This document shows positions 20,650 to 64,000 of a stretch of DNA of 64,000 nucleotides, one piece after another; within the stretch, counting starts at the first letter, position 1; each line of letters starts with the position of its first letter. The stretch comes from Mytilus californianus (taxonomy: Eukaryota): assembly GCF_021869535.1 (NCBI RefSeq), contig NW_026262690.1, positions 25,978,001-26,042,000 on the forward strand, read 5' to 3'. Below the pieces are notes generated by a model, which saw nothing but the letters and a program-made list of their open reading frames with translations, was not told where the DNA came from and searched no databases. The position numbers and the translations under genes are program-made.

Positions 20650-20817
20650 CTATAATCTTGAATGAGCTAAATTATGACTTTGTTCTAAAATGAACGGATG
20701 GACCTTTGTCTTTGCTTGAGGCCAACACAATATACATACAGCAAGAATAAAAACACCCGAAGCTATCACAGTTAAACTTATCATACCAACACATGAGGCG
20801 TCAAGCATTTGTTCGAT
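20650..20817 (-). CDS. CD36-like last exon: TM2 plus cytoplasmic tail ending KTKVHPFILEQSHNLAHSRL*
   Basis: Acceptor ttttcatttccag; 55 codons plus TAG; hydrophobic stretch MISLTVIASGVFILAVCILC. Confidence 0.88.
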   Translation of the reverse strand: MEQMLDASCVGMISLTVIASGVFILAVCILCWPQAKTKVHPFILEQSHNLAHSRL

Positions 20818-44596: not shown

Positions 44597-45103
44597 TAGG
44601 TATTGTTATATTTGATGATTTGCTAGTGAAAAATTGCTATTCTAGTTAAATTCACAACAAACTCTTTGAAATATAAAACAAAAAGCGCAAAATTCAACCT
44701 TCACATGTGAAATGTAGAAATTTTGTCTTTTGTGCAATACTAGCATACAAGCCGACACAAAATGTGTTGAAAAATAATCGAATATTTTCTGTAAAAACAG
44801 TTGGACTACAAATTGAACCGTCAAAGCTGCTTTCCCATCGATAATATAATCGATAGGTATTGTTATATTTGATGATTTGCTAGTGAAAATTTGCTATTCT
44901 AGTTTAATTCACAACAAACTCTTTGAAATATAAAATAAAAAGCGCAAAATTCAACCTTCACATGTGAAATGTAGAAATTTCGTCTTTTGTGCAATACTAG
45001 CATACAAGCCGAAACAAAATGTGTTGAAAAATATTCGAATATTTTCTGTAAAAACAGTTGGACTACAAATTGAACCGTCAAAGCTGCTTTCCCATCGATA
45101 ATA
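44597..45103. repeat. 257-bp tandem duplication
   Basis: Copies start at 44597 and 44854; they produce the twin ORFs 44642-44824 and 44899-45081 of the track. Confidence 0.95.
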
Positions 45104-45499
45104 ATTGTAAAAGAATTGGCAATTTGTAATGGGAATTACACTGCCTAGGTTTCAGAAGCACCTTTACAAATATAAAACATAATAATGTTGCTAGTTTGTA
45201 AACCATAGTCGGGTTGTCTGTCTTTGATTATCAAATCACGGTTAAATGTAACCGATTTTGAAAAAAAAATATATTCTTCAACTCGACTTAATTGATTGTG
45301 AAATAAAATTCATCGATATGTCTCGAAATTTGACTCGGAAAACTTGTTTATTATTGGGGGTATACGAAATATGAAAAAAAAATTCTTTCTTTTTGCCTCC
45401 ATAGTACTCCAAAGATATGAAACCATGATGATTATTATCCCTTATTATTTTGGCTACTCTGTATAGGTTTTTAAGTCATATAGCTCCTAACGTTGTGAA

Positions 45500-45950
45500 G
45501 TGTGTTTACACATCCCTGACTTTCGGATGTTTAGGTTTGAGTGTGTTTACACATCCCTGACTTTCGGATGTTTAAGTTTGAGTGTGTTTACACATCCCTG
45601 ACTTTCAGATGTTTAGGTTTAAGTGTGTTTACACATCCCTGACTTTCGGATGTTTAGGTTTGAGTGTGTTTACACATCCTTGACTTTCGGATGTTTAGGT
45701 TTGAGTGTGTTTACACATCACTGACTTTCAGATGTTTAGGTTTGAGTGTGTTTACACATCCCTGACTTTCGGATGTTTAGGTTTGAGTGAGTTTACACAT
45801 CCCTAACTTTCGGATGTTTAGGTTTGAGTGTGTTTACACATCCCTGACTTTCAGATGTTTAGGTTTGAGTGTGTTTACACATCCCTGACTTTCGGATGTT
45901 TAGGTTTGATTGTGTTTACACATCCCTGACTTTCGGATGTTTAGGTTTGA
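45500..45950 (+). repeat. 41-bp minisatellite, 11 near-identical copies
   Basis: Unit gtgtgtttacacatccctgactttcggatgtttaggtttga starts at 45500, 45541 ... 45910, with no spacers. Confidence 0.97.
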
Positions 45951-46589
45951 GCGTTTATAACAAAGGTAAATCCAGTAAAGCGCTTCAGACGCACACAATT
46001 TATAACGTGTTTAGTCCATTTTATAACAGCCTTTCTCTTTCAAGTATACAGTAATGTAACATGCAATTGTTTTCAACAAGAAAAACATTCATAAATTGCT
46101 AACAAAAACAACACCTATATCTCTTGCTTCTTAATGTTAACAAAATGAACTATAACAAAAATAAGTTTTGTAGAAGAGTAAGAGATTCTAGTTTATATTG
46201 AACAAAACGAGTAAAACATAATGACTAAAAATAATGATAACGCTCCCTATTAAAGATTTAAATAGTACTTCATATATTGTTATCATGTCGAACTTATCTC
46301 CATAAGAAAAATCCTTAACTTATGGATCTCTTTCTTGTACTGTTTCGTGTCTATTTATTATGATGTGACTGCACTCTGCAATTCAATGTATACCATCAAA
46401 CTTCACACATGACTATGTTCCTCCCTTTAACTCATCGTTTGTTTGATGTTTCAATCATTTGATTGCAAAGTACCTGTGACGTGTTATGATGAAAACAACA
46501 AGAACTATTTTGCATTTTGCATGGCACTTTTGTCTCATGCAATCTGGTTTCCCACGAAATGATGAATGACTGGAATCGTGTGGGTTTTT

Positions 46590-46715
46590 TCACTGTCCCG
46601 GTTTATATGGATTGTAGTCATCTTCCTTTAATGAAGCTAGCGTGTGATTGACAACCCTGTGATGAGCCTCATCTGCACGAATGGCAAGGATCACATCTAA
46701 CATCGTGGCGTTCTC
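46590..46715 (-). CDS. AOX: AOX-A last exon ([41 protein letters not shown])
   Basis: RADEAHH motif and NPYxPGQ terminus. Confidence 0.97.
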   Translation of the reverse strand, partial: ENATMLDVILAIRADEAHHRVVNHTLASLKEDDYNPYKPGQ

Positions 46716-49700
46716 CTAAAGTCAATAAAAATTGCTTCATATTATTTCTTTACGTAAATTAATGAACTAACTAAAAATGTATAATTATAAATGCTCACAT
46801 AAAGAGTCTTATTTGAGTGTTTTGAAGAACAATGAAGTTAATTTGCATGATATGAGGACAATAGCAATACCCTCGTTTACTATCTTGTGATAGAATTAAC
46901 ATTATTCAGCTGTACCAATTTGAAAATTTATTTTGTACACGATGTATTTTGAAACTTTTCGAAGAATTTATACTTTCAGTGGTATTTCATTTATATCATG
47001 TACACAAATATTATTTCGATTAAATGTAAAAAATATAATATTTACTTGTAACTTCCAATAATTAATTGCAATTTCTGGTGCAACCTGTGTCTTCCAATGC
47101 TGCATTGAACCCTTCTGTATGTCCTGTAATTTAAACAATTAGTTAATTAATACATAAATCAGGCCGATGGTTATTCTCGTTTAAATTGTTTCACATTTCG
47201 TCATGCCGGGTCATTTTATAGCTTACTATGAGTATGTGATTTGCTCATTGTTGAATGCGGTACGGTAATCTATAGTCTACGGTCTCTGATGATGTTGAAA
47301 GTTGTTGTGTCATTGGCAATTATACCACATTTCCTTATTTCTAAATTGATAAATTGGATACAAAATTATTTAACTGAACATGCATGTAAGAGGAGTAGCA
47401 AAACAGATTTCAATAAACGGTCTCTATCGTAAACCCAGAAAACTACACGAAGCAATGCTATCAGACGGATAATTAACATAAAAACCTCTCATGTCGTATT
47501 TTTCTTTATGCAATATAATTTAATTTAAAATACTTTGTAACAAAACATGTGCATGATTTACCTGTAAGCATTTAGAGTATGTTATCACTGCTTCTTCCTC
47601 CAAATATCCAACAAATCTGTGACAAAATCTTGGACTCATTAAGTAAGCTAAACTAAACATAGTCACGAAAGTACCTATAATACAAACATCGTCTTAATAG
47701 TGAGATTATGAACATTTTAAAAAGAGAAAAATGAATTACTTATGAATTGGGTAATGTTTCATGTCGGATGTGAATAATTCTTACCATTCAAATTGTAAAA
47801 TAGAGAAACAATGAATTTTCTTTGTTACGATATACTGAAATGATCTTTAAGTTTGTGAAAATTTAGTTTCAAGACGTAACATATGACACACAATGGTCTC
47901 GTGGTAGTGTGTTTGTCTTGAGTAAAGGAAGTATTGGATTCTCTGCTATGTGGTATCAAAAACATACAAAATTTAGCATCAATAACAAAGAATTGGATGT
48001 CAATCTTAAAAGAGGGATGAATAATACCAAAGGGTCAAAACGTTGCACGTTTAGATGAAAACGGCACAAATTGCATCATAGAATAGTCATATAAATGTAA
48101 CAATTTACCTTGTGCCCCTACAACACAAAGTCTAAATAATTGACTGGGTTGACGTAACTGTAATGCTGTCATGAGGTGCATTCTTTCATTTTCTGCTTCC
48201 TCTGCAACGAAAAAGTATAGCTGAATTTAGTCATAAGGGAACCATGTACTTAAAATAACTGAAGTGGGACCTTTTATAAAATACTAGTGGCCATAAATAT
48301 AGAGTACTCGAGTTTTCTGGTCGTACTTTAATCTAATGAAATAATTTGTGAATTGAGAAGGACTGAATTCTGAAGGGAAATATATTTACATTGCATCATT
48401 ATATTCTTTTTACAAAACATTATATGATTAAATGTGTTGTTCCCCTTCTTACGTTGTCATAGGCACATTATTTTTTTTATAATTATCTAGATAATGTACA
48501 TCTTATCACATTTTCTTAAGAAAACGTGTAACAAAGTTTACCTAGAAGTGTGTGGATCCAACCATAATCTCTTTGCATTCGTCTTAAAGAACTTAAATGT
48601 CTTAACATGGCGGCCACCATACCCGGGACACCAGCAACTGTTTCTAGAAAACATATTCGTCTGTAAAGAAAAATAGAAATATAAATTTGTTCTTCAGTCT
48701 TGACATTGCAACGATCTACACATTATGCTCTAACTTCATCAACAATCTACACATTATGCTCTAATTTCATCAACGATCTACACATTATGCTCTAACTTCA
48801 TGCATATATCAATTGAGAATTTATGTCATTTAGAATATATTTGAAAATCTTTGTAAAATTCTTTTGCTTGGGTGATTGCACTTTTTTCAAGACCTTTAGA
48901 AAGCAAGCAATTTATTCACGAAGAAGAAACATGCTCTGCAAAAAATGTGTCTAATGTTGTCACGTAATTGTTTTCTGTTATTTAGATAATGCACAAGACG
49001 GGAAATATTTTTTTACAATAAAAGAGACGTTTCAAAGTGCTTCCATTATCACCCATTTAAATCATCGGTGAAGACGGAATGACTATTTTCGTGAGCTTAT
49101 ATTCTTAAGTTGCTCATTTGCATACATATGTTGAGCATACAGAGATATTCCATGTAATGTTTTGCAGTTTGTATAAAAGCAATCATTTGTAATATATTTC
49201 AGATTTACAATGAAAAGGGAATCTTGCTGTTTTGATTCAACACTGTATAATGTAACAACAATTCACGGCAATTCGTGTAAAATGGAAGCCCCCCCCGCCC
49301 CCCCCCCCCCCCCCCCCCCCACTCTTTGGCATATATATATGTTTTTTGGGAGATGCCCCTCAATTCCATGAATTATTTGTTAAATATTGTTGTAAAATAC
49401 GCATGCAAGTGATATGGATGCCAATTATACACATTCATGACTATTATTATTTTCTGTCTCGATGAACCAACAAAACTAATCAAAAACTTACAAAACCCAT
49501 CTGCGTTCGTTTCTTTCCCCTCTGTTGAAACCACTCAGGGTATCAAAGGTCTTTCGCATTACTTTTACACTGTAGTATGCCATCTACAAAAATATAGAAG
49601 TGTAAGAGAATAAAATCACTCTGCCAGACTTCAGTCCTCTACAATATGTTTCAATTATTATAATTAGTTCTAACTGTATAATGCTTTATCTTATTATTGA

Positions 49701-52700
49701 CTTTTTAAATTTTAGTCTTTTCTTCCAGATTTAACTGATCACAGTATAACAATAGAGAGTTAAAAAAGAGAGGAGAAAGATACCAGAGGGACATTCAAAC
49801 TCATAAATCGAAAATAAACTGACAACGCCATGGCTAAAAAAGAAAAAGACAAACAATAGTACACAAAACACATAAAAAACTAAAGACTAAGCAAAACGAA
49901 CCCCATCAAAAACTGGGGGTGATCTCAGGTGCACCGGAAGGATAAGCAGAACCTGCTCCACATGTGGCACCCGTCGTGTTGCTCATGTTGGTACACAAAA
50001 TACCTATTTGGTTCTATGTTGTAAAGCTCATTTTTCTCATGAAGCGTGTGCTTTTTTTTCTCCAAATAAAATATTTTCAGAAATAAACCTTACAATATTT
50101 ATTACCTTCCTTAAACTATAAAATGATTTACAACGATATCAAATTATCCGATAAATCGCCGTTTACTTATTATAATTAAAAACTTGCCTTGTCAACTATA
50201 CCCTCTGGTGGCTTGTGTGTGACTTGAACACTGTGGAGTTCTCCTTCAGACCTGTGTTGAGAAAAGGATGTGAAGATCTGATTGTTTGTTGTCGTTACTA
50301 CACATAAGAAATTCAAAATCTTTATATTTATTTCTTTTTCGAGGAGGAATATTGTACTTTTGTCTAAACATGTATTTACAACATTCAATTGATAGATAAT
50401 AAAACTAGCAATACAGATATCATTAAAAAATGCCTAATCTTAGTCCTAGAAAATTTAGAGAGTTGAGGGACAATTATTCAAATATAGAAAAGCTTGAGAA
50501 CTTGTTTTTATTATATTGCAAATATGCATAAAATTGACCCGATTTGAGTACCAGTAATGTTAATCTTTAAATTCTTTATCTAAAGTGACAGATCTCATCA
50601 TCAGATACATTTCTATGAGTAAACTAAAAGCGTGGGATGATTCAGGTTTTTTTTAGTTTTTGTGAAATGTTATGTTTTTAGTATAGTTTCCCACAACGTC
50701 CTGTTGGACGATTAACAATATTCAATTACTCTATATAAAAATCGTGACCTATCACTTGTATGCAATTAAAGTAATAATGGATGCATGACGTAGTTTTTTT
50801 TTTATTAAACGCGAAAACGACCATCTTAACAAATCCTGTCAAAACTAATTCATATAGCGCATATCAATTGCTTATTTTTAATTTTTACAAACAGTAGTTT
50901 CTTAATTTGAGGACAGGGCCATTCAACTCTCGGAAAGAATGAATCATACTAATTCATCAACACTAGGTCTATTTAGGCTGCAAAATATTGCAAAGATAAA
51001 AAGAAAATTTCACTTAGATGCCTATTACGGTTCGAGTTTTAACGAAAATTGTATCCTGTTTTCTAATATTTGTCCCGCTTTGACTGCAATATTTCTGCTC
51101 GTTAGATCGATATTATTAACAATATTGTAAAGTAAATAGTTGAAACATTATCCTCTTCCACAAAATTGATCAAAACTCCACGTCATATGTAAGGTTCTGG
51201 AGATATTGATATGTTCTTGTGATTGGTTGGTAAACATAAAGGGTTGAAAAACTTGTGTTAAAAAACAATACGATGGCCATAAAGAGTGAACCTACCATAT
51301 TGGATGAGGTAATGCGTGTGTGCCAATTGGAGGAGGGTCTCCTGATACAACTGCTGATATCTTATCTTCGCTTTTCCTACAAGAGAAAGTACTTTCATTA
51401 GTTCAGTATACTGAAATTACGCGGTGGAGGTAAATAAAAATTTCCTAAGGAATGCTTTCCTGCAAAAACATATCGACGACTTAAAAATAAGCAACGATGC
51501 CAAACTCTAAATGTCAGTGAACCTTAAATAACCATTGACAAGTAGGCACATGTAGGTATGGAGAGTTGAAATCTATCGTGTTGGAGGTATTTATCAGTAT
51601 TGAATGCTTCTTTTGGTAATTTTATAGGGTTGTAAAAGCGTTGACCGTGCATGCGCACATTTTTAGAATGAAGCACTTCCGCGCTTCATACAAAATGTAC
51701 TCAGTCTGTCAACGCTTTTACACCCGAATAAATTTACAAAAAGAAGCATTCAATTCTTAAATGATTCTAGTAAAATGTACATATCAAATATCGAACAAAT
51801 TGAAAAGCTTGTATATTAGTAGCTGACGGATGCTTAAAATGTCGTTATGCGACAAGGAAACGTGTTTTAAAATATGAATTACTAAAAGGCTGCAAAGGAA
51901 ATTTAAATTGTTTTAAGCAACAAACATAGGAGTAAACAAACAACAAAAAACATAGATGACTCAAAGAGTGTTTGTATAGTACTTTGTATAAAACGTACAT
52001 GGATAATAATATGCATATTTCGTTTGTCAGAAACTTTCACATTTTACCAACTGCCATTTACATATACACGCATTATTGATTTTTTATTTGAACTAATTTA
52101 ACTTACTTGAAGTGCTGCAAACTTTTGGGGTCTGGAATGGTTTCATAATTTCCTGCTTTGAATTTTTGTATATTATCGTCTACTTCCCTTTGAGTTGCTA
52201 ACTTTCGAACACTACTGAGTCCCTTAGAAAATGAAGAAGAAGAATAATAGCAGATATTTTTAGAATTAATGAGAGAGATATAATAAAAAAAAATATCATG
52301 AAAGGACTGAAATAAAACCTTAATCTATCCGTGAGTAACTGTAAAGATGGAAATCTATATCCCATAAACTCTTACTCAATGTCTAGGTTACTTTATCATG
52401 TTTATAGTCTCAACTAAAGACAAGATCAAGTCTAAAGTCGCCCCTAGTCGACCCAAGTTGTAAATATATCAAGAAAGAATTTGTTACTTTCCCTAATAAA
52501 TATTGCCGGAATGGCTTTGAGTGGGATCCCGTCTGCGGGATGGCGTTAAAGCTGGGGGAACTAGCTTTTGTATACGTAGTCTGTTATTATTGTACCACAA
52601 GATACGAACTTGTAATATTAGGTTAGATGTTTTGGTACCAATATATGAGATATTGGGTTTTAGATAATGGATTGGAATATATCACAGTTCATTCACATCT

Positions 52701-53838
52701 AAATCGGCTGTCCAATTCAATAAACATAAACAAATTGGTACAGTCCAAATTCATTTAATAAGAGTCCAAATATAAAATAACAGTGTTATACAAATCAGTA
52801 ATTTAAACCAAAAACAATTAACATATCTGATTGCATTGGAAAATCCTAACGAAGTTCATGTGCTCTCGTTGGCATATCCAAACGGAGTTCCATAATAAAA
52901 AAAATTATCTTTCTTTATATACCAAATAGCGTTGCTAAAAACAAAGTTTGTAATGGTCATTTTGTCCACAGAAATTAGATAACAGATTGATTCCGTTTAT
53001 CAAAGAGAAATTATTTACACGCTTGTGTATTGAACTAAACATAATTGATCAAATAGAAATATTGAATAACCGTAAGATTTAAGTTCAATCTTGACCATAA
53101 GTATTGACACATATAAATTTATAATCTAACATGTTTCAGGTGTAAACAAATATTTCGGACATTTAAATTCATTATGAAATTACTATTAAATAAATTAAAT
53201 ATGCCTGGTGCATACGAAATTTACCCGTTAATAAACTGTAATAGAAATCAACATAATTAGATAGTTTTGAATATAAAATTTAGTACAAAAATAATGTGTG
53301 ACAAATAATTCAACAGTAATATTGACAACACCCCTCCCTCCCCCCTCCAAAAAACCCCCAAAAAAAACCAATACAAAAAAAAACAAAACAAAACCCCAAA
53401 AAATATATATAGACACATATAGTCATAAACACCGAAAAGATTCTGGACAAAACTAACGAGTCATTTTTATTTTAACATTTCTTGTGAAACAAAAGCCTGC
53501 CCAGCTCTACATCTTCGACATTAATATATGTGAAAATTTTCGCAATCGCATTGTCCTATCGATCTTTGATTTTGACCATCAATCAGCTCAAAAATATAAA
53601 AAAAAAATTAAAAATTAAAAAAACAACTGATGACAGACAGCCTTCATGACGTACAAAGTGTACAATTAGTGACAACTAAACGCGACCATAAATGCGACTC
53701 GTTTCACAAAAAATCTTGACAAAATACTCGGGTAAGTAATGAACATTTCAGTATAACTTACGCGATTGTTGTCGTAAGCTGCGGTCGTAAGATTCTTTGT
53801 GAAAAGAGCTTCTGGACCTTAAATATCAAAGGAGGCAT
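46590..53838 (-). CDS. AOX: Mitochondrial alternative oxidase, copy A (10 coding exons, 951 nt, ~316 aa)
   Basis: Exons 53762-53838, 52107-52214, 51296-51376, 50188-50251, 49492-49583, 48542-48660, 48109-48201, 47562-47674, 47046-47123, 46590-46715 give one open frame. All di-iron ligand motifs are present ([33 protein letters not shown]), plus LPHPIW and the animal-type C-terminus NPYKPGQ. Exon 1 and the exon 2 acceptor are less certain. Confidence 0.96.
47046..47123 (-). CDS. AOX: AOX-A exon ([26 protein letters not shown])
   Basis: APxIAxxYW motif; 78 nt, phase 0-0. Confidence 0.96.
47562..47674 (-). CDS. AOX: AOX-A exon ([38 protein letters not shown])
   Basis: [11 protein letters not shown] hallmark. 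Confidence 0.97.
48109..48201 (-). CDS. AOX: AOX-A exon ([31 protein letters not shown])
   Basis: ExxH iron motif; canonical splice sites. Confidence 0.97.
48542..48660 (-). CDS. AOX: AOX-A exon ([39 protein letters not shown])
   Basis: First iron-ligand motif LETVA; canonical splice sites. Confidence 0.97.
48709..48801. repeat. 31-bp tandem triplication in an AOX-A intron
   Basis: caacgatctacacattatgctctaacttcat x3, about 50 nt upstream of the acceptor at 48660. Confidence 0.95.
49289..49320 (-). repeat. 32-nt G-run (one interruption) on the AOX-A sense strand
   Basis: C8-G-C23 on the plus strand, in the intron between exons at 49492 and 48660. Confidence 0.95.
49492..49583 (-). CDS. AOX: AOX-A exon ([31 protein letters not shown])
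   Basis: Acceptor tttttgtag, donor GTAAGT, phase 0-2. Confidence 0.93.
50188..50251 (-). CDS. AOX: AOX-A exon ([21 protein letters not shown]) with GC donor
   Basis: Acceptor caacacag, donor AAG|GCAAGT; THxxP..xDK motif. Confidence 0.92.
51296..51376 (-). CDS. AOX: AOX-A exon ([27 protein letters not shown])
   Basis: Acceptor tttctcttgtag, donor TG|GTAGGT; LPHPIW motif. Confidence 0.93.
52107..52214 (-). CDS. AOX: AOX-A exon ([36 protein letters not shown])
   Basis: Donor AA|GTAAGT; acceptor either ctcag (52214) or ctaag (52222). Confidence 0.8.
53762..53838 (-). CDS. AOX: AOX-A probable first coding exon, mitochondrial-presequence-like ([25 protein letters not shown])
   Basis: Basic, hydroxylated, no acidic residues; donor GC|GTAAGT, phase 2; an upstream acceptor (atacag) suggests a non-coding 5' exon. 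Confidence 0.6.
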
Positions 53839-56800
53839 GAAAACAACTACAGTTTTCTGTATAGATACATAAAAAAGTTTCCCCTCCCTTATATAAGTAC
53901 AAATGAAATATATGGACGGCAGTTTTATCGGCAGCGGTACAAACTGCAAGTGGTAGTAGATATATGTATATTGTATATGCATGAAATATTCGACACTGGA
54001 CGTTAAGCAAGCAAAAAAAAAAAACAAACAAACAAACAATCAATCAATCAACTTGATACGGTTATATTAGGCGATAAAAAAGGTATTCCGGGTAATCTTA
54101 TTTTTTGTGGAATGATTCTAATGTTATATTAAAACTGAAAAAGAAGACTTGTACAATATTATATTTTTATCACTTACTTGAACTAGAGACACATTATCAA
54201 CATTTCCGATCAAGGGTTTTACCAATCCAATTTGTTTAATCAAACCTTGACTTTGCAAACCGCACCGACATAAGCTTCTCACGACTGACATTATTTATTG
54301 TTTATGTAGTATTGTGTGCCTATAATATTTTTCGCGCTAATATATTGTATAATTTCAACCTCAATGACCCGCTGATGCAAGCTTCTACGAGATTTACAAT
54401 CACGGATTTCCTTGTATCGATTTGCTCAGTGTTCTATATTTAGTAACACTGACATAGGGATAGCCGGTGTATATACGTCATCATGTCAAAAATAAAGAAT
54501 AAAGTCACAAAATGAAACAAAAATTTCCTTACAACTATTCAATGGAATTATTCGTATGCTCGATTGATTTACTAAATTATGACGAAATAATGGAATACTA
54601 ACTATAGAAATCTGATGCAGGTAACCTATGGATTTCGTCACACATCGAGAAGTTTCGTTTACATACCGAGGTTAACGAACTGTTGATCTCACGTTTACAC
54701 GTAAAAATTATTAACTGAAAGATTTAAAGTGATAGTAAAACATTTCTTTATTTATTTTTGTCAGATGCAGTATCACTTTCAGAATATTTTTTTTATTTTT
54801 AGGCATTTGGAATGAAATCTTAATTGGGTCTATTTTCCTGTCATCAAATTGATAGCCTGTCACGGCGGCTTTTGTATGGCAATTTACACTAATATGTCGT
54901 TAAATGAGATTGGATGCCCTGCATTTATCATGCTTTTCAATACCATATGGTCAAATGGCTGAAAGACCATCCACCTAAATTATTGAAAACTATCATTCTG
55001 CATTGACACTAATATATTGGTGTAAATTAGATACACTGACCCATTCGCGCTAATATAACCGGAAGAAAAGTGACACTAGGAACTTTTACTATAATTTGCA
55101 AAGTGCTTTATATGAACTCTCGTTTTAAATTGAATATTTATATAAACTCTCGTTTTAAATTGAATGTTTCTCGTTTTAGTTTTAAGTTGAATATTTCTTG
55201 TTCTAAATGTTTATTTATTCTTAAATATAATGTTTCTTTATTTCAAATACCCAAAGAGATTATAGATTTTACAACTTAATCCGATGGCTGTCTAAAGGGC
55301 GAAAGATAATACATGTATCTTACACTCAACTACAAAAGAAGCAATTATCGCTATTTTACTGAGTTAAGCCGGAGGACAATAATCCGATTATTATTGCATA
55401 AGATTAGACAATTATATTTATATTTTATGAGAACCTTTTATAATGTTTTAATACCCTTAACTTTGAATTAATGTATGTTTTGTAAACTGTTGCTTGGGCA
55501 GTCTTCCCCTAGCTTTCAAACTGTACACTTGTGAATAAATTTGTATTTACTGTAGACGGTCTTTCGTTTAAAGCAGCCACAGTGTCGATTATTGACCAAC
55601 AGACTTTAATGTAACCCGTACCGAAATTCACGGGGTTGTAATAACGTCCTGAATGTGTATTTAATACATGCATCGCTGTTCTATCTTGTCTTTCTCTCGT
55701 TCAATTGCCAAACATGATAGAAGTGTTATTACTTATAAACAAAAAATTTAGGTTTTGGTAATTAAACCAGAAAAAGTTTACATTGTGTTAATTTACAAAA
55801 TCTATACTTGAATTGCGACCCTCTTTTTTAGTTTGTAACCCGGATTTGTTTTCTCTCAATCGATTTATGACTTTTGAACAGCGGTATACTACTGTTGCCT
55901 TTATTTACATGGTAAACTCGATTACAGCTAACCGCTTAAATTCTAGAGTAATTCAAGATACGATAACGTACTACATGTACACAATTCTACGCCTGCTCCT
56001 CTCCTGGTATTGGGGTCTAGAGAATTTTAACAACTTAAGCTTGTAGTAGGTAAACCTAAGACATTTCTCAAGTTCGAGAACTATATGAATATATTGGCTT
56101 GTTTAATTGGTTGCAGAATATTCAATGTCGCGGTATATTTACTAACATGATGAGTCCAAATGGACCAGTCTTTGGTCAATTTATATGGCTTTGTAGAGTA
56201 GCAACATAGAATAATTTTAAAGGTTTTGGTTTTGTCCGACCGATTTTTTTTTGTCTCAAGACGTACCCGATGATGTTTGTTCTATTGAGTGGAGCAGAAT
56301 CCAGTGGCAAACTCTGCCTTATTTCCAGTAGCATCCGAATTCTTCACCGGGTTTTCAATGTAATGTTTTGTGAACTTCGTTACAAGTATACATATTTTGT
56401 CTATTTTATTACGGCTATGACATTGTTGTTCCTTTAACATCTCAACATTTTTCTATCATGAACTCCAAAGAAATACACATAATTGTAGAGAAAAAAAACC
56501 AACATGATTGGACAAGTGACTCAAAGATATCTTTATGTATTATATTAACTCACATTAGAGGAAAACAGTTCTTTTAGTGATATTTCTTTACGATTTCTAC
56601 AAAAGGTTCGTGTCAATTTTAGCGAATCTACTATGGCGAACAACAATGAATGTTCGCCCCTTGAATTTCATTTACGTGTTCTACAAAGGGTTCGTTGAAA
56701 AGGCTAAACATTTATTGTCTTGGCAGCTTCAGCGTTTTAAATAGCAGATTTATTTAAAATCACCACTTTTTTTTATATGCAAAGGTAAAGGTTTGATAAG

Positions 56801-59720
56801 GCCACTTTTTTGGTCCCTTGAATTCAAAAATCAAAAGTATTATAAATCGACCAAATAACACCTTCAGATGTTCTTAAGACATTAGTCTATCCGAAATCCG
56901 TGTTTTTATATTTGAATTTTGTCTTCTTGCATTTAGTGCAAAACAGCAAAAAAAAAAATGTCAAAATAGCCTCAGTTTGAGCTTGTCAGTATGCTAAAAT
57001 TCATAATGCCATAAACCTACATTAATTCATCTACACAATGTTGTAAAACACGCCCACCTCTCTGTCTGAATTAATCCGATGCAGGCCTTCCAAGTTGGAC
57101 AACCCTTAGCTATGTCCACATCTCACATTGAACTGGGACTTTCAAACTCATAAGTCGAAAATAAACTGACAACGCCATGGCAAAAAAAGAAAAATACTAA
57201 AAGACAACCAACAGTATACAAATCACAACACAGAAAACTAAAGACTGAGCACCACGAACCCCGCTAAAAACTGGAGGTGATCTAATGTGCTTCGGAAAGG
57301 TAAGCAGATCCTGCTCCACATGTGACACCCGTCGTGTTGATCCTGTTAGTACAAATCCGGTGATAAGTATTCTTCGGTAGGTCAAATTCGTGGAAAAGGA
57401 AAACGGGATTGTGGTTAAGACGATTTGAATATATCCGTCGCCATCTGTGAAACAGATATTCCATAACGATTAACCAACTCGTGATGGCGTCCAAATTTTT
57501 TTCGAAGGGACGATTTCAACTTCACCACTTGGAACCACCACAGCAAAGACAGGCGTGTTTTACACCATCGTGATGATAAATTAATGTTGATAAATTAATG
57601 TAGATTTATGGCATTATTAATTTTATTGCGATAGACGACCACGGAATTGAAAAATAACGATAACGAGTGTCTTTTCACGAAATTGAAAGTTGAGAACCTG
57701 GTTTTATTTGAAGGTCAGAGACATGTGCATGTGAATCAATCTCTATATTTGTGATAAAATTTTGTAATACTGGGGGTTAAAGATATCTTTTAACTAAAAT
57801 GATTTTGGTTATAGTAAAACATATTAAAAATGGGCTGAAAATACCGAAGGGACAATAAAAAAAAATAAAAAAATAATAAGTCAGAGAAAAAGCGACAATA
57901 TCATGGCAAAAAATAGAAAACGATGAAAAGACGAGCAAAAGTCTACAAAACCCTTTAAGGAAAAGTCTGAACAATACGACCCCCCCCCCTAAAAAAAAAA
58001 ACCAACAACAAAAAAACATGGGAAACACACCAACATTTGCCTTAATCTGTAAGAGAAAATGGTCTTGAGCTGTTTTCACCTCTTTACGATTTGTTAATAA
58101 TAGTCTACAATATTGTTAGCACCTCAAAGTACACAAATGGAGTTTTGATACTATGAATTTTAGTTTAGATTGATAGACTTTTATCAAAATTTAAGACTCA
58201 AATGGGCGAGATTTTTCTTAAACAATAGAGGACTTTATTGATCATTTAAAAAAAAAATTAAAAAAATATAGAAATGAGAAGAAAAAAATCTGTAAACAAT
58301 TCCATATTGGAAGGTGCACAACTTCAATAGGATTACAAACTGTCAGTGAATTTCGAAAGCTCTGGGTAAAACACGGATTTGTCTATTGTCTATGGAACGT
58401 TTCGCTGAAGAAATGACTTAAGTTCCGTAGTCAGGAAAAACTGGGGGAAATTTTCAAACAATTCCCTTATAGTAGGTCCACAATTGCAAAATATGTGCAA
58501 TCATTCGCGGTAAAGTTTCAGGGATCTGGGTTACGAACTGTAGTAGAAGTTGATTACACGAAATAGGTACTGTCTTTAGTATCTTTGATGAAAAAGACCA
58601 AGTTCCAAAGTTTAGAAAAAGTTTTAAAAATCCCCGCTTCATAATAGCAAGCGTACAGCTTCAACATGTGTGCAATCTTTGAAGTTTCAGGGATTTTGGT
58701 TGAAACTATAGATCATTATGCAAATTAGGTTTCCACTTTATCTACAAAATGGCCCCGTTCTGATTTAAGATCTGAGTAAGTTACCTTACCACTTTTTCAA
58801 AGCGTATTAAGTCGTACTGGACATCGAATTTCTTTTTTATAAAGGCTGTAATATAAGAATATAATGCGATATGATTGCCACTAACTCAAAGACAAATATG
58901 GACCATGGGACGAGGAGGTAAACTATAAAACAATCCATACCATTTAGCAAGCTACAAAAGTCTAAATTGTAGTACATTCAGCTTCAACACAAATAATTGA
59001 CCACCCAGTCCACAATTGCCGTAGCCGGACATACATATATCGTAATATTGTTAACTCCAATCGCCTACACACGACAAATCTGATCAGTTTGTGGTACATT
59101 TAAGACTGGGCATTTTTTCTATAATAATGTACAAATTATATTTTTATACAAGTCTTATTGAAAGCATCTTTCTCATTTTTTTTTATTGTTTACAACTTCA
59201 TAAAAACAAATAACCCATAACAAAAAAAAAAACATGTTTCAAACAATATTGAAATGATAGGGTTTAAAAATTCAGTGCTTTCCCGTACTGTGGCTTTTAT
59301 CGAAACGATTGTTTACATATAAAATCAAATTCAACAGATACAACCATTGTTTTTACAGGACATACATGAAAAACGTTAACATAACGTTGATTATAAAACA
59401 TTTATTACAATGATTTAATTTATAAAACGTCTATATAGATACAGTACATTGGAGTACTAGACAGTTGTTAACATTTGATTCCATAGATTACGGAGGAAAA
59501 AAGTCCGAGTATTTTTACAAAAAAGCCATAAAGACATTAGAAAAACGATTGAAATCCATTTGTATAAAAATCTGTCTGTTTTTTAAAGCGGTCCATGACT
59601 AACCATTCTGGCTGGCAATTCTTTTTTCAAACCATTTTATTTCCTTAAAATGACAGATGGCGAGAACTAACATGTCTGGATATCTTATTGGTCAACTTAA
59701 CACGATAATAGTATTAGCTA

Positions 59721-60761
59721 TCATTTTCCTGGTTTATATGGATTGTAGTCATCTTCTTTCAATGAAGCTAGTGTGTGATTGACCACCCGGTGGTGAGCCT
59801 CATCTGCACGAATGGCAAGGATCACATCTAACATCTTGGCATTATCCTAAAATAGATGCAAATAATAATAAAAACAAATCCTACCGATCATGACGTTTCA
59901 TAAACTTTTCGTTGTGTTGATTGATTGATAGTTGAATGTTTAATTCTTAGCAGAAAATATTGATCAAGGAAATGAAAAAGGGTAACAGTAAATCAGTTAA
60001 TAATAGTGTCCATGGAGTAGGAGCAGATACTTTTAAATGATATTCGAAGAGTAAACACATGTTATAAACGGCATCCTCTGATTTGTTGCTTTCCGTGGCG
60101 AGGAGTGCTACATTCTCACCACAAGTTAAAAGTATTGAATTTGACAGATGACACAAAATGGGATTGCACATTTCTACAATCTGACTGGGGAAATGCTACC
60201 GCTAATGTCGACTATATATGTATTGTGTTTATGGATTTAATTAAGAATAATACCAAGTTACATGCTGTTACAGGTAGACATGACTATGCGTAAAAGTTCT
60301 TACCGGTAATTTCCAGTAAGTAATAGCAGATTCTGGAGCCGATTGTGTCTTCCAGTGTTGCATGGAACCATGATGTATATCCTGCAAGAAGACCATGTAA
60401 AAATGTTTTACAACATACACACACACATTATTTTTTTGCGCATCGTTACATTTCTATAAATAAAGTTGTTCCTTATTATTTAGTTGTATTTTTTTCGTTA
60501 GATTTTTAATATCATTTGATTCTCATAAAATTTTACAATAAAAAGAAGGGAAAACTGATGAAACCAAACATATCTGAGGCAACTATATATGAGGTTAGAG
60601 AAGACCAAAGATTTTCATTTACGATGAAAAAGTACATGTAAATTTTACCTGCACACATTTAGTGTATGTAATTACTGCTTCTTCTTCCAAGTATCCAACA
60701 AATCTGTGGCAAAATCTAGGACTTATTAAATAAGCCAAACTAAACATGGTAACAAAAGCAC
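59721..60761 (-). CDS. AOX: Alternative oxidase copy B, last three exons; the 5' exons are not in the window
   Basis: Exons 60649-60761 ([38 protein letters not shown]), 60304-60381 ([26 protein letters not shown]) and 59721-59846 ([19 protein letters not shown]...NPYKPGK*). Exon lengths (113/78/126) and phases equal copy A, with open frames and intact splice sites. I found no EEAENERMH exon in 60762-64000. Confidence 0.93.
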
Positions 60762-62231
60762 CTGTAAGTCAAATATAATTGTTTTAATGCTTATAAAGTC
60801 TTGCATTCAGTTTTTTAAGATTTGGTACATAAAAAGTAAAAACATGATTGATTTTTTGTAAGCCGTTTATGAAGCTTAATTTTATAAATAAAATTCAACA
60901 AACTGCAAACGTAATACATGTAGGCAATACAGTTTTATGTACAGCTTTAAAACTTTGACAAACTAGATGTATATACATCATGTAACTCACGTAACTTGTC
61001 TAATATCGTAACGATATTTCTTCAAATGTTTTTTTTTTAATTCATCCATTTAAACTTACTAACGTTTGCTTTCATCAAAGATTGACTCAGTCTGCTAGTT
61101 TGTATGTAGATTACGACAGTGGCATGTATCTAGGAACATGGTACAGAGTCATTTTGAGCATGAACTAGTAAATCATCCTTAGAGGTTTAACATTGAAAAT
61201 AGTCAAAATTTGATTTATCGACCTGTCAGATTATGAAGATAGAAAAAAATCATTTTTAAATAGAAATAATTGTCCTTAACTATTTTTGAAAATTTGCGTT
61301 CGTCGTCCGTTAATTTTACAAAAATGTTCTCTGAAACTACCGGGCCAATTTTAAACAAACTTTGCCAAAATCATTATTGGGGTAATTGGGTTTAAATATA
61401 GTGTCCAAGACAGAGACAGAATTGTTCAGAATGTTGAAGTCTGTCTACTTTCCCTTTAAATCATAACAGTGAGACGACTTCTTATAGGAGTTATTGCCCT
61501 TTAAATACTGTTTCCAAAAGGTTTTGAATATTATCTTGAAAACTATAACCGATAGAAAGTAACTTTAAATATCACAAGCATTCTGAGAGTATTGCATGGC
61601 AATACATAGTCCCCTACCGGGTAAAAAATCATTATACTGGAACAAAATGCTAACTTGTTCTATAACTTGTCATGGTGTAAACAAAAAGAAAACATCAAGT
61701 CAATATCTTCAAGCATGACTAAAAACAGTGTGGAAAACTGAATATGAGTGAATTTTTTCAAGTCCAAGGACCATAACTCTACACAAAATTATCAGACCGA
61801 AACAAAAATTTAAACTTGATCTGTAACTTGTCATGATAAAACTGTATACCAATTGTCAATCAATATCTTCAAGCATGATGAAAAAAAGTGAGGAAAACCT
61901 ATAACACTCTAACATTAGATATGATTAATAGTTCTCTAAAATTAGATATGACGTAATACAATGTATATCTAATTTCAAATTACAATCAAATATAATTAAT
62001 AGTTCCAAATATTTTTTCTTTCATTTGTCACAAACTAATAAAGATTTGTAACTTATCTATAAAATGTCAACAACTTGTATCTACACAATGTAATGTAATG
62101 AAATATATACCATAATAAAAATAGATTATTATCTAATTAAAGGATTTCACTTAATAATATATATATATATATTTTGCATGCACACGTATAAAAATTGCGG
62201 TTTTTATCCAACGCAATCATAGGTTTGAACG

Positions 62232-62450
62232 TCTAGAGATTTGCACAACGATACTAATATAAGATGGTATTATACGAAGATGTTGTTAATAAATCGTATT
62301 GAGCTATTTTTATACATATAATCAGTATTGTTAAAATAATTGACACTGAAGAAGGCTATTTGTTAAGCCGAAATATTTGTCAATACGATTTATTAACAAT
62401 ATCTTCGTATAATACCATCTTATATTAGTATCGTTGTGCAAATCTCTAGA
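62232..62450. mobile_element. Foldback MITE, 219 bp, with 71-bp terminal inverted repeats
   Basis: 62232-62302 is the reverse complement of 62380-62450 with one mismatch; both ends read tctaga. Confidence 0.9.
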
Positions 62451-62570
62451 CTTATATAATTTTTTTCCTTATCTGCACAGTATCGTCTATTCTAGACGAT
62501 CCGGTACATAGTAAATTTGCTGGTTGGTCCTTTTTATAGACTTCTATATATATATATATATATATATATA

Positions 62571-63488
62571 CAAGTCTAAATTGAAAACAACGTTCAAACC
62601 TATGATTGCGTTGGATAAAAACCGCAATTTTTATACGTGTGCATGCAAAACAAATTTCTTGTTAGAGGGGTCTAAATACAGCACAAACAACATTTTCCAA
62701 AAGACCAAAAAAGTGAAAAAGTATATTTTAACAAATCGCATTTGAGTAACAGGTCGAACAACAAATGTTCTTAAACCCTGCTGACTGCCATTGGCGATTG
62801 CCAAATAAACGGATCACCGATGTAATAAATGGATCTTAATTATAAATTTAATACTAAACAGAAAACAATAAACTTGCGGAAAAGATGGTATACCGCAAAC
62901 AAAAGGTGCAAAGGTTTTTGTACACCATATCCGGATTTCGACAATTAATGTCTCTTTAGTGATGTTAGGAATCGAAACGGTATTTGGAAAGCCATACAAT
63001 TTACCTCAATTTCGGGTAGACTCTTGAATTTTGAGGAGTCAAAATAGGATGAACGGATCATATAAACCCGAAGGCAAATATAATACAAGCCCAAACGAAA
63101 AAGTATAAGCAAGTCTAAATTGAAAACAACGTTCAAACCTATGATTGCGTTGGATAAAAACCGCAATTTTTATACGTGTGCATGCAAAACAAATTTCTTG
63201 TAAGAGGGATCTAAATACAGCACAAACAACATTTTCCAAAAGACCAAAAAAGTGAAAAAGTATATTTTAACAAATCGCATTTGAGTAACAGGTCGAACAA
63301 CAAATGTTCTTAAACCCTGCTGACTGCCATTGGCGATTGCCAAATAAACGGATCACCGATGTAATAAATGGATCTTAATTATAAATTTAATACTAAACAG
63401 AAAACAATAAACTTGCGGAAAAGATGGTATACCGCAAACAAAAGGTGCAAAGGTTTTTGTACACCATATCCGGATTTCGACAATTAAT
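62571..63488. repeat. 379-bp near-identical direct repeat pair, 539-bp offset
   Basis: 62571-62949 and 63110-63488; a partial inverted copy lies at 62171-62231. Confidence 0.95.
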
Positions 63489-64000
63489 ATATATACATGT
63501 AGCATTCAGAAAATTAGTTTATACAAAATAACATATAAATGAGTTATCTCCCTCTGTACAGATATTATGGGTTAACATAGTACTCTAACATAAGTTATTA
63601 AGTTTTTTTATGGACCATAACTCTGGACTAAATCATCAGACCGGAATAAAATTCGAACTTGATCTGTAACTTGTCATGATAAAACTATATACCAAATATC
63701 AAATCAATATCTTCATGAACGAAGAAAAAACGTGTGGAAAACTGAGTTGCCGGACTGACGGATGGACAGACGGACAGAGTGCAAACCTAAAGTCCCCTTC
63801 GACTTTGTCGGTAGGGGACTAAAAAATGTCCAGAAAGACAAGATCTACTAATAAGTCAGAATGGCCAAAATCGTCCGTTGACTTTAAAAAAAAGGTATTG
63901 ACCTTAAATAACGTTATTGCTTATCATTTTATAACAGCGTTTTTGCCTATCATCTCACAAGGCAAGATCTCCAATGAGCCAATATTGGACGACTTTTTAT

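What the first reader, a model, noticed from the sequence alone, without database searches (positions are those of the whole stretch)
46590..60761. Two tandem, diverged, apparently intact alternative oxidase paralogs in an animal genome
Seen: a complete AOX-A and the last three exons of AOX-B, on the same strand about 6 kb apart. Over the 105 shared codons they differ at 13 amino acids (~88% identity). They carry many synonymous third-position changes, identical exon lengths and phases, and unrelated introns of different size (330/438 nt versus 457/267 nt). Established: AOX is the cyanide-resistant ubiquinol oxidase linked to hypoxia and sulfide tolerance, and animals that have it usually carry one gene. 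Inference: this is an old tandem duplication kept under purifying selection, possibly sub-functionalised by tissue, emersion, hypoxia or sulfide exposure. I cannot tell whether this duplication has already been reported.
Basis: partly seen in the sequence, partly recalled or inferred. Interest (0 to 1): 0.72.

Follow-up and report, generated by a model that had tools for sequence, protein, structure and literature searches.

The report
Two tandem mussel alternative oxidase genes
The California mussel carries two complete, old, selectively maintained copies of the cyanide-resistant mitochondrial alternative oxidase gene side by side; other Mytilus mussels have the same pair and databases list both genes, but I found no paper describing them.

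Summary
The window is Mytilus californianus (GCA_021869535.1, scaffold JAKFGE010000004.1, 25978001-26042000).

- **AOX-A:** RefSeq LOC127737805, 331 aa, 10 exons, window 46590-54291, minus strand.
- **AOX-B:** RefSeq LOC127737804, 333 aa, 10 exons. Only exons 8-10 lie in the window; exon 7 starts 338 nt past its end.
- **Divergence:** A and B differ at 13 of the last 105 codons and at 71 of 331 overall. dS is 0.93 and dN/dS 0.14. Introns do not align.
- **Conservation:** M. edulis, M. trossulus and M. coruscus have the same B-then-A tandem; M. galloprovincialis has adjacent A- and B-type entries on one contig. Ortholog dS is about 0.25 with dN/dS 0.11-0.12 for each copy, so the duplication predates the Mytilus radiation and both copies are constrained.
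- **Active site:** all di-iron ligands and the animal C-terminal motif are intact in both.
- **Expression:** stranded RNA reads and spliced RNA contigs cover B exons 8-10. They cannot be told from a 99% identical degraded copy, B'. I did not test A expression.

Sub-functionalisation remains an inference. The assembly also holds a second pair (B'-C) about 50 kb away, which may be a haplotype artefact. Both genes are already annotated as "uncharacterized protein". I found no paper on them, and the scan has no other note on them.

The parts
54178..54291 (-). AOX-A exon 1 (start codon, presumed mitochondrial presequence)
   Evidence: The exact spliced match to P0275 / XP_052104695.1 begins here. 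The first 45 residues have 6 R+K and 1 D+E.
52107..52222 (-). AOX-A exon 2
   Evidence: Exact spliced match; tblastn matches to Mytilus AOX proteins.
51296..51376 (-). AOX-A exon 3
50188..50251 (-). AOX-A exon 4, followed by a GC-AG intron
49492..49583 (-). AOX-A exon 5
48542..48660 (-). AOX-A exon 6 (LETVAG iron motif). It differs from B exon 6 at only 4 of 119 nt.
48109..48201 (-). AOX-A exon 7 (NERMH iron motif)
47562..47674 (-). AOX-A exon 8 (LEEEA iron motif)
47046..47123 (-). AOX-A exon 9
46590..46715 (-). AOX-A exon 10 (RADEAHH iron motif, NPYKPGQ C-terminus, stop codon)
46359..46589 (-). Presumed AOX-A 3' UTR, up to the only AATAAA within 790 nt downstream of the stop codon
   Evidence: Motif scan. 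Inferred; no RNA was laid here.
54292..59186 (-). Intergenic spacer between B and A, which should hold A's own promoter
   Evidence: No B-strand RNA depth apart from repeat fragments, and no B-to-A joints. That it holds the promoter is inferred.
59187..59720 (-). AOX-B 3' UTR
   Evidence: Stranded RNA depth runs from about 59200 to 59720 with the first mate on + only. An AATAAA lies at 59187.
59721..59846 (-). AOX-B exon 10 (RADEAHH iron motif, NPYKPGK C-terminus, stop codon)
60304..60381 (-). AOX-B exon 9
   Evidence: RNA contigs join it to exons 8 and 10.
60649..60761 (-). AOX-B exon 8 (LEEEA iron motif)
   Evidence: RNA contigs run on 121 nt beyond its 5' edge.
60762..64000 (-). In-window part of AOX-B intron 7 (3576 nt in all). 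B exons 1-7 lie beyond the window, at window-equivalent 64338-72005.
   Evidence: Exact spliced match of P0270 on L001. L001:18006-32285 equals window 64000-49721 at 100%.

Best explanation
These are two separate, complete, tandem genes for the mitochondrial alternative oxidase (AOX) in Mytilus californianus.

**Arrangement (shown).** On the minus strand, AOX-B (LOC127737804, 333 aa) comes first. After 5.4 kb comes AOX-A (LOC127737805, 331 aa). Each has the 10-exon structure of mollusc AOX genes and its own start and stop codons. The same B-then-A pair is present in at least three other Mytilus species.

**History (shown).** The pair arose by a whole-gene tandem duplication before the Mytilus species diverged. 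It is about 3.5 to 4 times as old as the M. californianus/M. edulis split, measured by synonymous divergence. Both copies have been under purifying selection since.

**Protein (shown from sequence, function inferred).** Each copy keeps an N-terminal basic presequence, all four iron-binding motifs and the animal-type C-terminus. Each should therefore be imported into mitochondria and oxidise ubiquinol with O2, bypassing complexes III and IV when these are blocked by hypoxia-reoxygenation, sulfide or NO.

**Division of labour (inferred, untested).** The 71 differences sit in three places: the presequence and N-terminal arm; a block after the second iron motif; and the loop before the last helix. 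None touches the catalytic core. Together with unrelated flanking DNA, this suggests the copies differ mainly in regulation, or in import, dimer or membrane-surface properties. One would then act as a housekeeping AOX and the other as a condition- or tissue-specific AOX.
For: **Identity**
- The window matches GCA_021869535.1 at 100%.
- Exact spliced models equal the RefSeq proteins P0275 and P0270.
- Both score a full-length PF01786 match: 327 bits (A) and 320 bits (B), against a cut-off of 22.7.
- B aligns to trypanosome AOX 3VV9 at E = 2e-72, with LET, NERMH, LEEEA and RADEA.H conserved.

**Divergence**
- 71 of 331 residues differ; dS 0.93, dN/dS 0.14.
- Only exons align between the two genes.

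**Age and constraint**
- A-type and B-type clades each contain M. californianus, M. coruscus, M. edulis and M. trossulus; the B-type clade also holds M. galloprovincialis. SH-aLRT support is 97 and 100.
- Ortholog dS is 0.26 (A) and 0.23 (B), with dN/dS 0.107 and 0.123.

**Synteny**
- B sits upstream of A on the same strand in M. edulis, M. coruscus and M. trossulus, with gaps of 3.3-5.3 kb.

**Expression of the B type**
- Strand-specific reads fall on exons 8-10 and the 3' UTR, and the introns are empty.
- RNA contigs are spliced 10-9-8 at the predicted junctions and continue 121 nt upstream.

**Comparable conservation**
- Over the AOX domain, A and B are about equally similar to outgroup AOXs: 73-87% and 73-84%.
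Against:
- RNA on B exons 8-10 cannot be separated from the degraded copy B', which is 99.1% identical there. One of the variants seen in the reads matches B'.
- No enzymatic, localisation or differential-expression data exist, so the division of labour is pure inference.
- Exon 6 is nearly identical between A and B (4 of 119 nt differ). This suggests either gene conversion or synonymous constraint, and it makes dS a slight underestimate.
- I could not place the duplication relative to other mytilid genera, because the four nearest outgroup sequences carry no names.
Confidence: 0.9

Rival explanations
1. A and B are two haplotypes (alleles) of one AOX gene, placed in tandem by the assembler.
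For: Mytilus genomes are highly heterozygous. This same scaffold does hold a second AOX unit, B'-C, that is about 97% identical to B-A and could be such an artefact.
Against: - A-B dS is 0.93 and the introns do not align.
- Distinct A and B orthologs stand in the same tandem order in three other species' assemblies.
- The A-type and B-type clades are each strongly supported.
Confidence: 0.01
2. AOX-B is a non-functional or unexpressed duplicate (a pseudogene), and only AOX-A works.
For: - The B-type stem branch is 2.6 times as long as the A-type stem (0.26 against 0.10).
- The near-identical copy B' is clearly degraded, and part of the RNA signal could come from it.
Against: - B has an intact 333-codon reading frame over 10 exons with canonical splice sites.
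- B orthologs show dN/dS 0.12 between species.
- All iron ligands are kept.
- Correctly spliced, correctly stranded RNA is present.
Confidence: 0.05
3. The B exons 8-10 in the window are an alternative 3' exon cassette of a single AOX gene, like the duplicated exon 10 of oysters, rather than part of a second gene.
For: Oyster AOX makes two isoforms from a duplicated terminal exon (PMC5589949). From the window alone, only B's last three exons are visible.
Against: - B exons 1-7 exist 0.3-8 kb beyond the window and give a complete protein.
- A has its own exon 1 with a start codon, 5.4 kb downstream of B's stop.
- No RNA joint links B to A, and the spacer has no B-strand coverage.
Confidence: 0.02
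4. The real copy number is four, not two: a recent segmental duplication of the whole B-A unit produced B'-C, and the family is still expanding and decaying in M. californianus.
For: - B' (LOC127736893) and C (LOC127737806) lie about 50 kb 5' of B on the same strand.
- Their non-coding DNA is 94-99% identical to the B-A unit, with transposon insertions.
- A-C dS is 0.047.
- B' has lost exon 4 and part of exon 6.
Against: - The same pattern fits an uncollapsed second haplotype, in a species with presence/absence variation.
- M. edulis, M. coruscus and M. trossulus show only B and A within 10 kb on each side.
- I could not obtain read depth.
Confidence: 0.4

Closest known systems
Oyster AOX with a tandemly duplicated exon 10 (CvAOXA/CvAOXB; Liu & Guo 2017, PMC5589949)
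   Same: An intertidal bivalve, a 10-exon AOX gene, and two protein forms of nearly equal length with all iron ligands kept. In the oyster, one form is preferred under air exposure.
   Different: - Oysters duplicate only the last exon and choose between the copies by 3' alternative splicing of one gene. Mytilus duplicated the whole gene, so each copy has its own flanking DNA.
- The oyster exon-10 peptides differ at 14-15 of 41 residues, near the last ExxH motif. The Mytilus exon-10 peptides differ at only 3 of 41.
- That paper states that no animal was known to have more than one AOX gene.
Single-copy mollusc AOX genes (Lottia gigantea, Crassostrea gigas and others)
   Same: The same Pfam family, 10 exons, and the animal C-terminal motif. 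The domain is 73-87% identical to A.
   Different: There is one locus per genome in those descriptions, whereas here two conserved loci sit in tandem.
Plant AOX1/AOX2 multigene families and fungal aox paralogs (e.g. Aspergillaceae, PMC10744626)
   Same: The enzyme is duplicated into differently regulated, stress-related and housekeeping copies, some of them in tandem (my own knowledge for plants).
   Different: These are independent duplications in other kingdoms. The plant regulatory cysteine mechanism is not expected in animal AOX (my own knowledge). No regulatory data exist for the Mytilus pair.
Trypanosoma brucei alternative oxidase (PDB 3VV9)
   Same: A homologous di-iron four-helix-bundle quinol oxidase. 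B residues 101-324 align at E = 2e-72 with all ligand motifs.
   Different: A protist enzyme with a different N-terminus and C-terminus. It serves only as a structural reference.
Other lineage-specific animal AOX duplicates visible in annotations (Mercenaria mercenaria, Littorina saxatilis, Paralvinella palmiformis, Actinostola sp.)
   Same: Two AOX proteins on one contig. The Mercenaria and Littorina pairs are each other's sisters in the tree.
   Different: In the tree those pairs are species-level duplicates. The Mytilus pair is older than the genus radiation, and I showed it to be conserved in order and strand across species.

Membership tests
Alternative oxidase (Pfam PF01786; di-iron carboxylate quinol oxidase) | Full-length match to the AOX profile above the curated cut-off | tested here: met
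   A scores 327 bits and B 320 bits, against a cut-off of 22.7, covering profile positions 1-215 of 216. Single exons also pass.
Alternative oxidase (Pfam PF01786; di-iron carboxylate quinol oxidase) | Four iron-binding motifs (LET, NERMH, LEEEA, RADE..H) with all Glu and His ligands | tested here: met
   All four are identical in A, B and C and align to the motifs of trypanosome AOX 3VV9. None of the 29 A/B differences from the AOX-domain start to the C-terminus touches them.
Alternative oxidase (Pfam PF01786; di-iron carboxylate quinol oxidase) | Cyanide-insensitive, SHAM-sensitive ubiquinol:O2 oxidoreductase activity in mitochondria | not testable with these tools
   Needs recombinant enzyme or mitochondrial respirometry.
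Animal-type AOX | C-terminal motif N-P-[YF]-X-P-G-[KQE] (McDonald et al. 2009, as quoted in PMC13679545) | tested here: met
   A ends in NPYKPGQ and B in NPYKPGK.
Animal-type AOX | The 10-exon gene structure of mollusc AOX (PMC5589949) | tested here: met
   A and B each have 10 coding exons. Exons 3-10 have identical lengths in the two genes.
Animal-type AOX | N-terminal mitochondrial targeting presequence | tested here: inconclusive
   The first 45 residues are basic and hydroxyl-rich with 0-1 acidic residues. No targeting predictor or experiment was available.
Retained (functional) tandem gene duplicates | Adjacent, on the same strand, each with a complete reading frame and canonical splice sites | tested here: met
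Retained (functional) tandem gene duplicates | Each copy has orthologs in related species, with dN/dS far below 1 | tested here: met
   Tree. Ortholog dN/dS is 0.107 (A) and 0.123 (B). Synteny holds in three further species.
Retained (functional) tandem gene duplicates | Both copies are transcribed | tested here: inconclusive
   B-type RNA is spliced and stranded correctly but cannot be separated from B'.
Oyster-type alternative terminal exon system | Duplicated exon(s) inside one gene, chosen by alternative splicing | tested here: not met
   B is a complete upstream gene with its own stop codon and 3' UTR. No B-to-A joints were seen.

The most novel reading that the evidence does not exclude
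Mytilus mussels have evolved a two-isoform alternative oxidase system by whole-gene duplication. This would be convergent with the exon-10 duplication of oysters. One copy would be constitutive. The other, probably the faster-evolved B, would be specialised for emersion, hypoxia-reoxygenation or sulfide/NO stress, through different regulation or different surface and N-terminal properties. It would be the first conserved, functionally divided AOX gene pair described in an animal.
Probability: 0.35. Interest if true: 0.55.

Novelty: new member of a known kind. Interest (0 to 1): 0.35.

Why it matters
AOX is the main candidate for how sessile intertidal and sediment-dwelling invertebrates keep mitochondria working through hypoxia, reoxygenation, sulfide and NO. 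As late as 2017 the literature held that animals have at most one AOX gene.

A pair of intact paralogs, conserved across a whole genus of ecologically and commercially important mussels, offers three things:
- a natural experiment on AOX specialisation in animals;
- a parallel to the oyster splice isoforms;
- a practical warning, because qPCR, RNA-seq and proteomic studies of 'the' Mytilus AOX may be mixing two genes that are 78% identical, or four in this assembly.

It is not a new kind of system. Both genes are already in RefSeq and UniProt, unnamed or named only by domain.

Tried and rejected
- **Exon-sized queries.** The word-index protein search cannot reach full-length relatives from exon-sized queries. 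I therefore used the one big profile search with a single exon given by reference, only to obtain full-length AOX references.
- **Joined spliced models.** Exons were searched by reference. After that I used only the public proteins the tools returned (P0275, P0270), which my script showed to equal the spliced exons exactly. Exons were joined only inside scripts, for that equality check and for dN/dS.
- **Further AOX exons or relics in the window.** tblastn with all Mytilus AOX proteins found none outside A and B exons 8-10.
- **Intron and UTR similarity between A and B.** None was found. One 130-nt match in intron 4 is a dispersed repeat.
- **Literature.** Eight full-text searches and targeted reading found no description of Mytilus AOX paralogs. 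McDonald et al. 2009 and Jacobs & Ballard 2022 are not held, so I could not check them.
- **Naming the nearest outgroups.** P0182, P0166, P0200 and P0211 have no names, only an SRA run id, so the duplication could not be dated against other mytilid genera.
- **Downstream gene.** Pfam on the exons fused to AOX-A in the M. galloprovincialis model gave only a sub-threshold TMEM100 hit.
Full report
**What is in the window**

A six-frame reading of 44-64 kb shows AOX-like peptides only on the minus strand. Eight stop-to-stop pieces, searched by reference, each hit Pfam PF01786 (Alternative oxidase) above its cut-off. Five of them lie at 46.6-48.7 kb and three at 59.7-60.8 kb. The splice sites flanking the last three exons of both sets are canonical. 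The window holds no N.

**Getting full-length references**

Exon-sized queries cannot reach full-length relatives in the word-index search. I therefore gave one exon (window:48543-48659:-) to the profile search. I then used the Lottia AOX it returned as the query for the word search.

tblastn of the returned proteins against the window showed Mytilus proteins to be closest and revealed five more upstream exons of gene A, including exon 1 at 54178-54291.

A cluster look-up showed two 90%-identity clusters:
- The A type holds M. edulis, M. trossulus, M. californianus (two proteins) and M. coruscus.
- The B type holds M. edulis, M. galloprovincialis, M. californianus and M. trossulus, with M. coruscus in a cluster of its own.

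Accession numbers are adjacent and the contigs shared.

**Identity of the window**

Fetching the contigs that encode the M. californianus proteins showed that the window is that genome at 100% identity. It is GCA_021869535.1, JAKFGE010000004.1, record 25978001-26042000, in the same orientation.

A script that demands an exact spliced translation gave the following:
- **AOX-A** is LOC127737805 / XP_052104695.1 (P0275, 331 aa). Its 10 exons are 54178-54291, 52107-52222, 51296-51376, 50188-50251, 49492-49583, 48542-48660, 48109-48201, 47562-47674, 47046-47123 and 46590-46715.
- **AOX-B** is LOC127737804 / XP_052104694.1 (P0270, 333 aa), also with 10 exons. Exons 8-10 are at 60649-60761, 60304-60381 and 59721-59846. 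Exons 1-7 lie beyond the window, at window-equivalent 64338-72005. Intron 7 is 3576 nt, so exon 7 begins only 338 nt past the window's end.

From here on I used only the database proteins.

**Divergence**

- By Nei-Gojobori, dS is 0.93 and dN 0.13, so dN/dS is 0.14. On the shared exons it is 0.078.
- blastn of the two gene regions aligns only the exons. Introns 8 and 9, the 3' UTRs and A's upstream kilobase show nothing better than E = 0.02.
- Exon 6 is an exception in the other direction. It has 4 differences in 119 nt (pS 0.14, against about 0.55 gene-wide), and its synonymous divergence is also low between species. This could be gene conversion or synonymous constraint; I did not resolve it.

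**Are both copies kept by selection?**

The maximum-likelihood tree has 58 AOX proteins.
- An A-type clade holds M. californianus A and C, M. coruscus, M. edulis and M. trossulus (SH-aLRT 97).
- A B-type clade holds M. californianus B and B', M. coruscus, M. galloprovincialis, M. trossulus and M. edulis (SH-aLRT 100).
- The two clades are sisters (support 93). Four unnamed sequences sit just outside them.
- The B stem (0.26) is longer than the A stem (0.10).

I also mapped the M. edulis genes exactly. Ortholog dS between M. californianus and M. edulis is 0.26 for A and 0.23 for B, with dN/dS 0.107 and 0.123. Paralog dS within either species is 0.83-0.93.

So the duplication is roughly 3.5 to 4 times as old as that species split, and both lineages have been constrained since.

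The order (B upstream of A), the strand and the spacing are conserved:
- 5.4 kb in M. californianus;
- 5.05 kb in M. edulis;
- 5.27 kb in M. coruscus;
- 3.25 kb in M. trossulus.

**Protein features**

- Both proteins give full-length PF01786 matches.
- B aligns to trypanosome AOX (PDB 3VV9) at E = 2e-72, with the four ligand motifs LET, NERMH, LEEEA and RADEA.H conserved.
- The stretch from CFLETVAG to NERMHLM is identical in A and B. By the alignment numbering in PMC5589949, this stretch holds two of the iron motifs and most of the listed dimer-contact residues.
- The 29 differences from the AOX-domain start to the C-terminus cluster in two blocks, just after NERMHLM and in the segment before the last helix. 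The remaining 42 differences are in the N-terminal roughly 100 residues.
- Both proteins end in the animal motif N-P-[YF]-X-P-G-[KQE] (motif as quoted in PMC13679545).
- Both N-termini are basic and nearly free of acidic residues.
- Over the AOX domain, both are about equally similar to outgroup AOXs: 73-87% for A and 73-84% for B.

**Expression**

- In the raw stranded RNA run of the organism that holds the stretch (X21, about 6% of it read), reads lie on 59200-59846, on exon 9 and on exon 8. All have the first mate on +, as expected for a minus-strand RNA. The introns have no depth. One read spans intron 8.
- RNA contigs of two further runs (X16, X17) join exon 10 to 9 to 8 at exactly the predicted junctions and run on 121 nt upstream of exon 8. 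That equals exon 7 plus 28 nt.
- The spacer between B and A has no such coverage apart from dispersed-repeat fragments, and no joint links B to A.
- An AATAAA at 59187 fits the 3' end of the coverage.

Two caveats apply. A second B-type copy, B', is 99.1% identical over this part, and one read variant (59587) matches it. So the RNA proves a B-type transcript, not B alone.

**Copy number beyond the window**

The same scaffold carries LOC127737806 (C, 331 aa; A-C dS 0.047) and, upstream of it, LOC127736893 (B', 287 aa). They lie about 50 kb 5' of B. Their non-coding DNA is 94-99% identical to the B-A unit, with transposon insertions. B' has lost exon 4 and the 3' part of exon 6. This is either a recent segmental duplication with one decaying copy, or an uncollapsed second haplotype. 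I could not decide without read depth.

**Comparison with what is known**

Liu & Guo 2017 (PMC5589949) describe a duplicated exon 10 with alternative splicing in oysters. They state that no animal was known to have more than one AOX gene. The Mytilus case is a whole-gene duplication instead.

Current annotations show other animal AOX duplicates: Mercenaria, Littorina, Paralvinella, Capitella and Actinostola. An animal with two AOX genes is therefore no longer exceptional in databases.

Eight full-text searches and several targeted readings found no paper on Mytilus AOX paralogs. Two key reviews are not held. The scan's own notes list only this same stretch.

**Verdict**

The reading as an old, selectively maintained tandem duplication is supported. 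Sub-functionalisation is plausible but untested. The genes are already annotated, as 'uncharacterized protein', so this is a new, apparently undescribed member of a known kind and of moderate interest.

Noticed in passing
L003:10001-17526 and L009:10001-21239 (same scaffold, record 26100218-26128779, about 50 kb beyond the window's B gene): A second AOX pair. C (LOC127737806) is intact, with dS 0.047 to A. B' (LOC127736893, 287 aa) lacks exon 4 and the 3' part of exon 6. Their non-coding DNA is 94-99% identical to the B-A unit. This is either a segmental duplication or an uncollapsed haplotype.
   Followed up: partly
window 48542-48660 (A exon 6) versus L001:16925-17043 (B exon 6): Exon 6 differs at only 4 of 119 nt between paralogs that are near saturation elsewhere (pS 0.14 against about 0.55). 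Its synonymous divergence is also low between species. This points to gene conversion or constraint on synonymous sites.
   Followed up: partly
window 45499-45951 and 44597-45103: A 41-nt tandem repeat with 11 copies (95% matches) and a 257-nt unit with 2 copies lie just downstream of AOX-A. The copy next to gene C has them too.
   Followed up: no
window 62565-62949 and 63104-63488: Two 385-nt direct copies, 99% identical, inside B intron 7.
   Followed up: no
window 55826-55907 and 57135-57340: Short pieces of the B-A spacer have very high depth in RNA contigs, with many loose ends and variants. They look like fragments of dispersed repeats transcribed elsewhere, not local genes.
   Followed up: no
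window 20653-23235 (minus strand): Exons here match residues 293-429 of the M. galloprovincialis model VDH97347, which fuses them to AOX-A exons 1-9. That is a merged gene model, and it shows the downstream neighbour is syntenic. The only Pfam hit is a sub-threshold one to TMEM100. M. edulis CAG2223846 (605 aa) is another over-long AOX model.
   Followed up: partly
P0001 (Actinostola sp. QZH41_014598) and P0157 (QZH41_014599): A sea-anemone protein model contains a partial AOX followed by a full AOX, next to another AOX gene. Tandem AOX copies therefore also occur in a cnidarian.
   Followed up: no
window 50186-50187 (donor of A intron 4): A and C use a GC-AG intron 4, whereas B uses GT-AG.
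   Followed up: no
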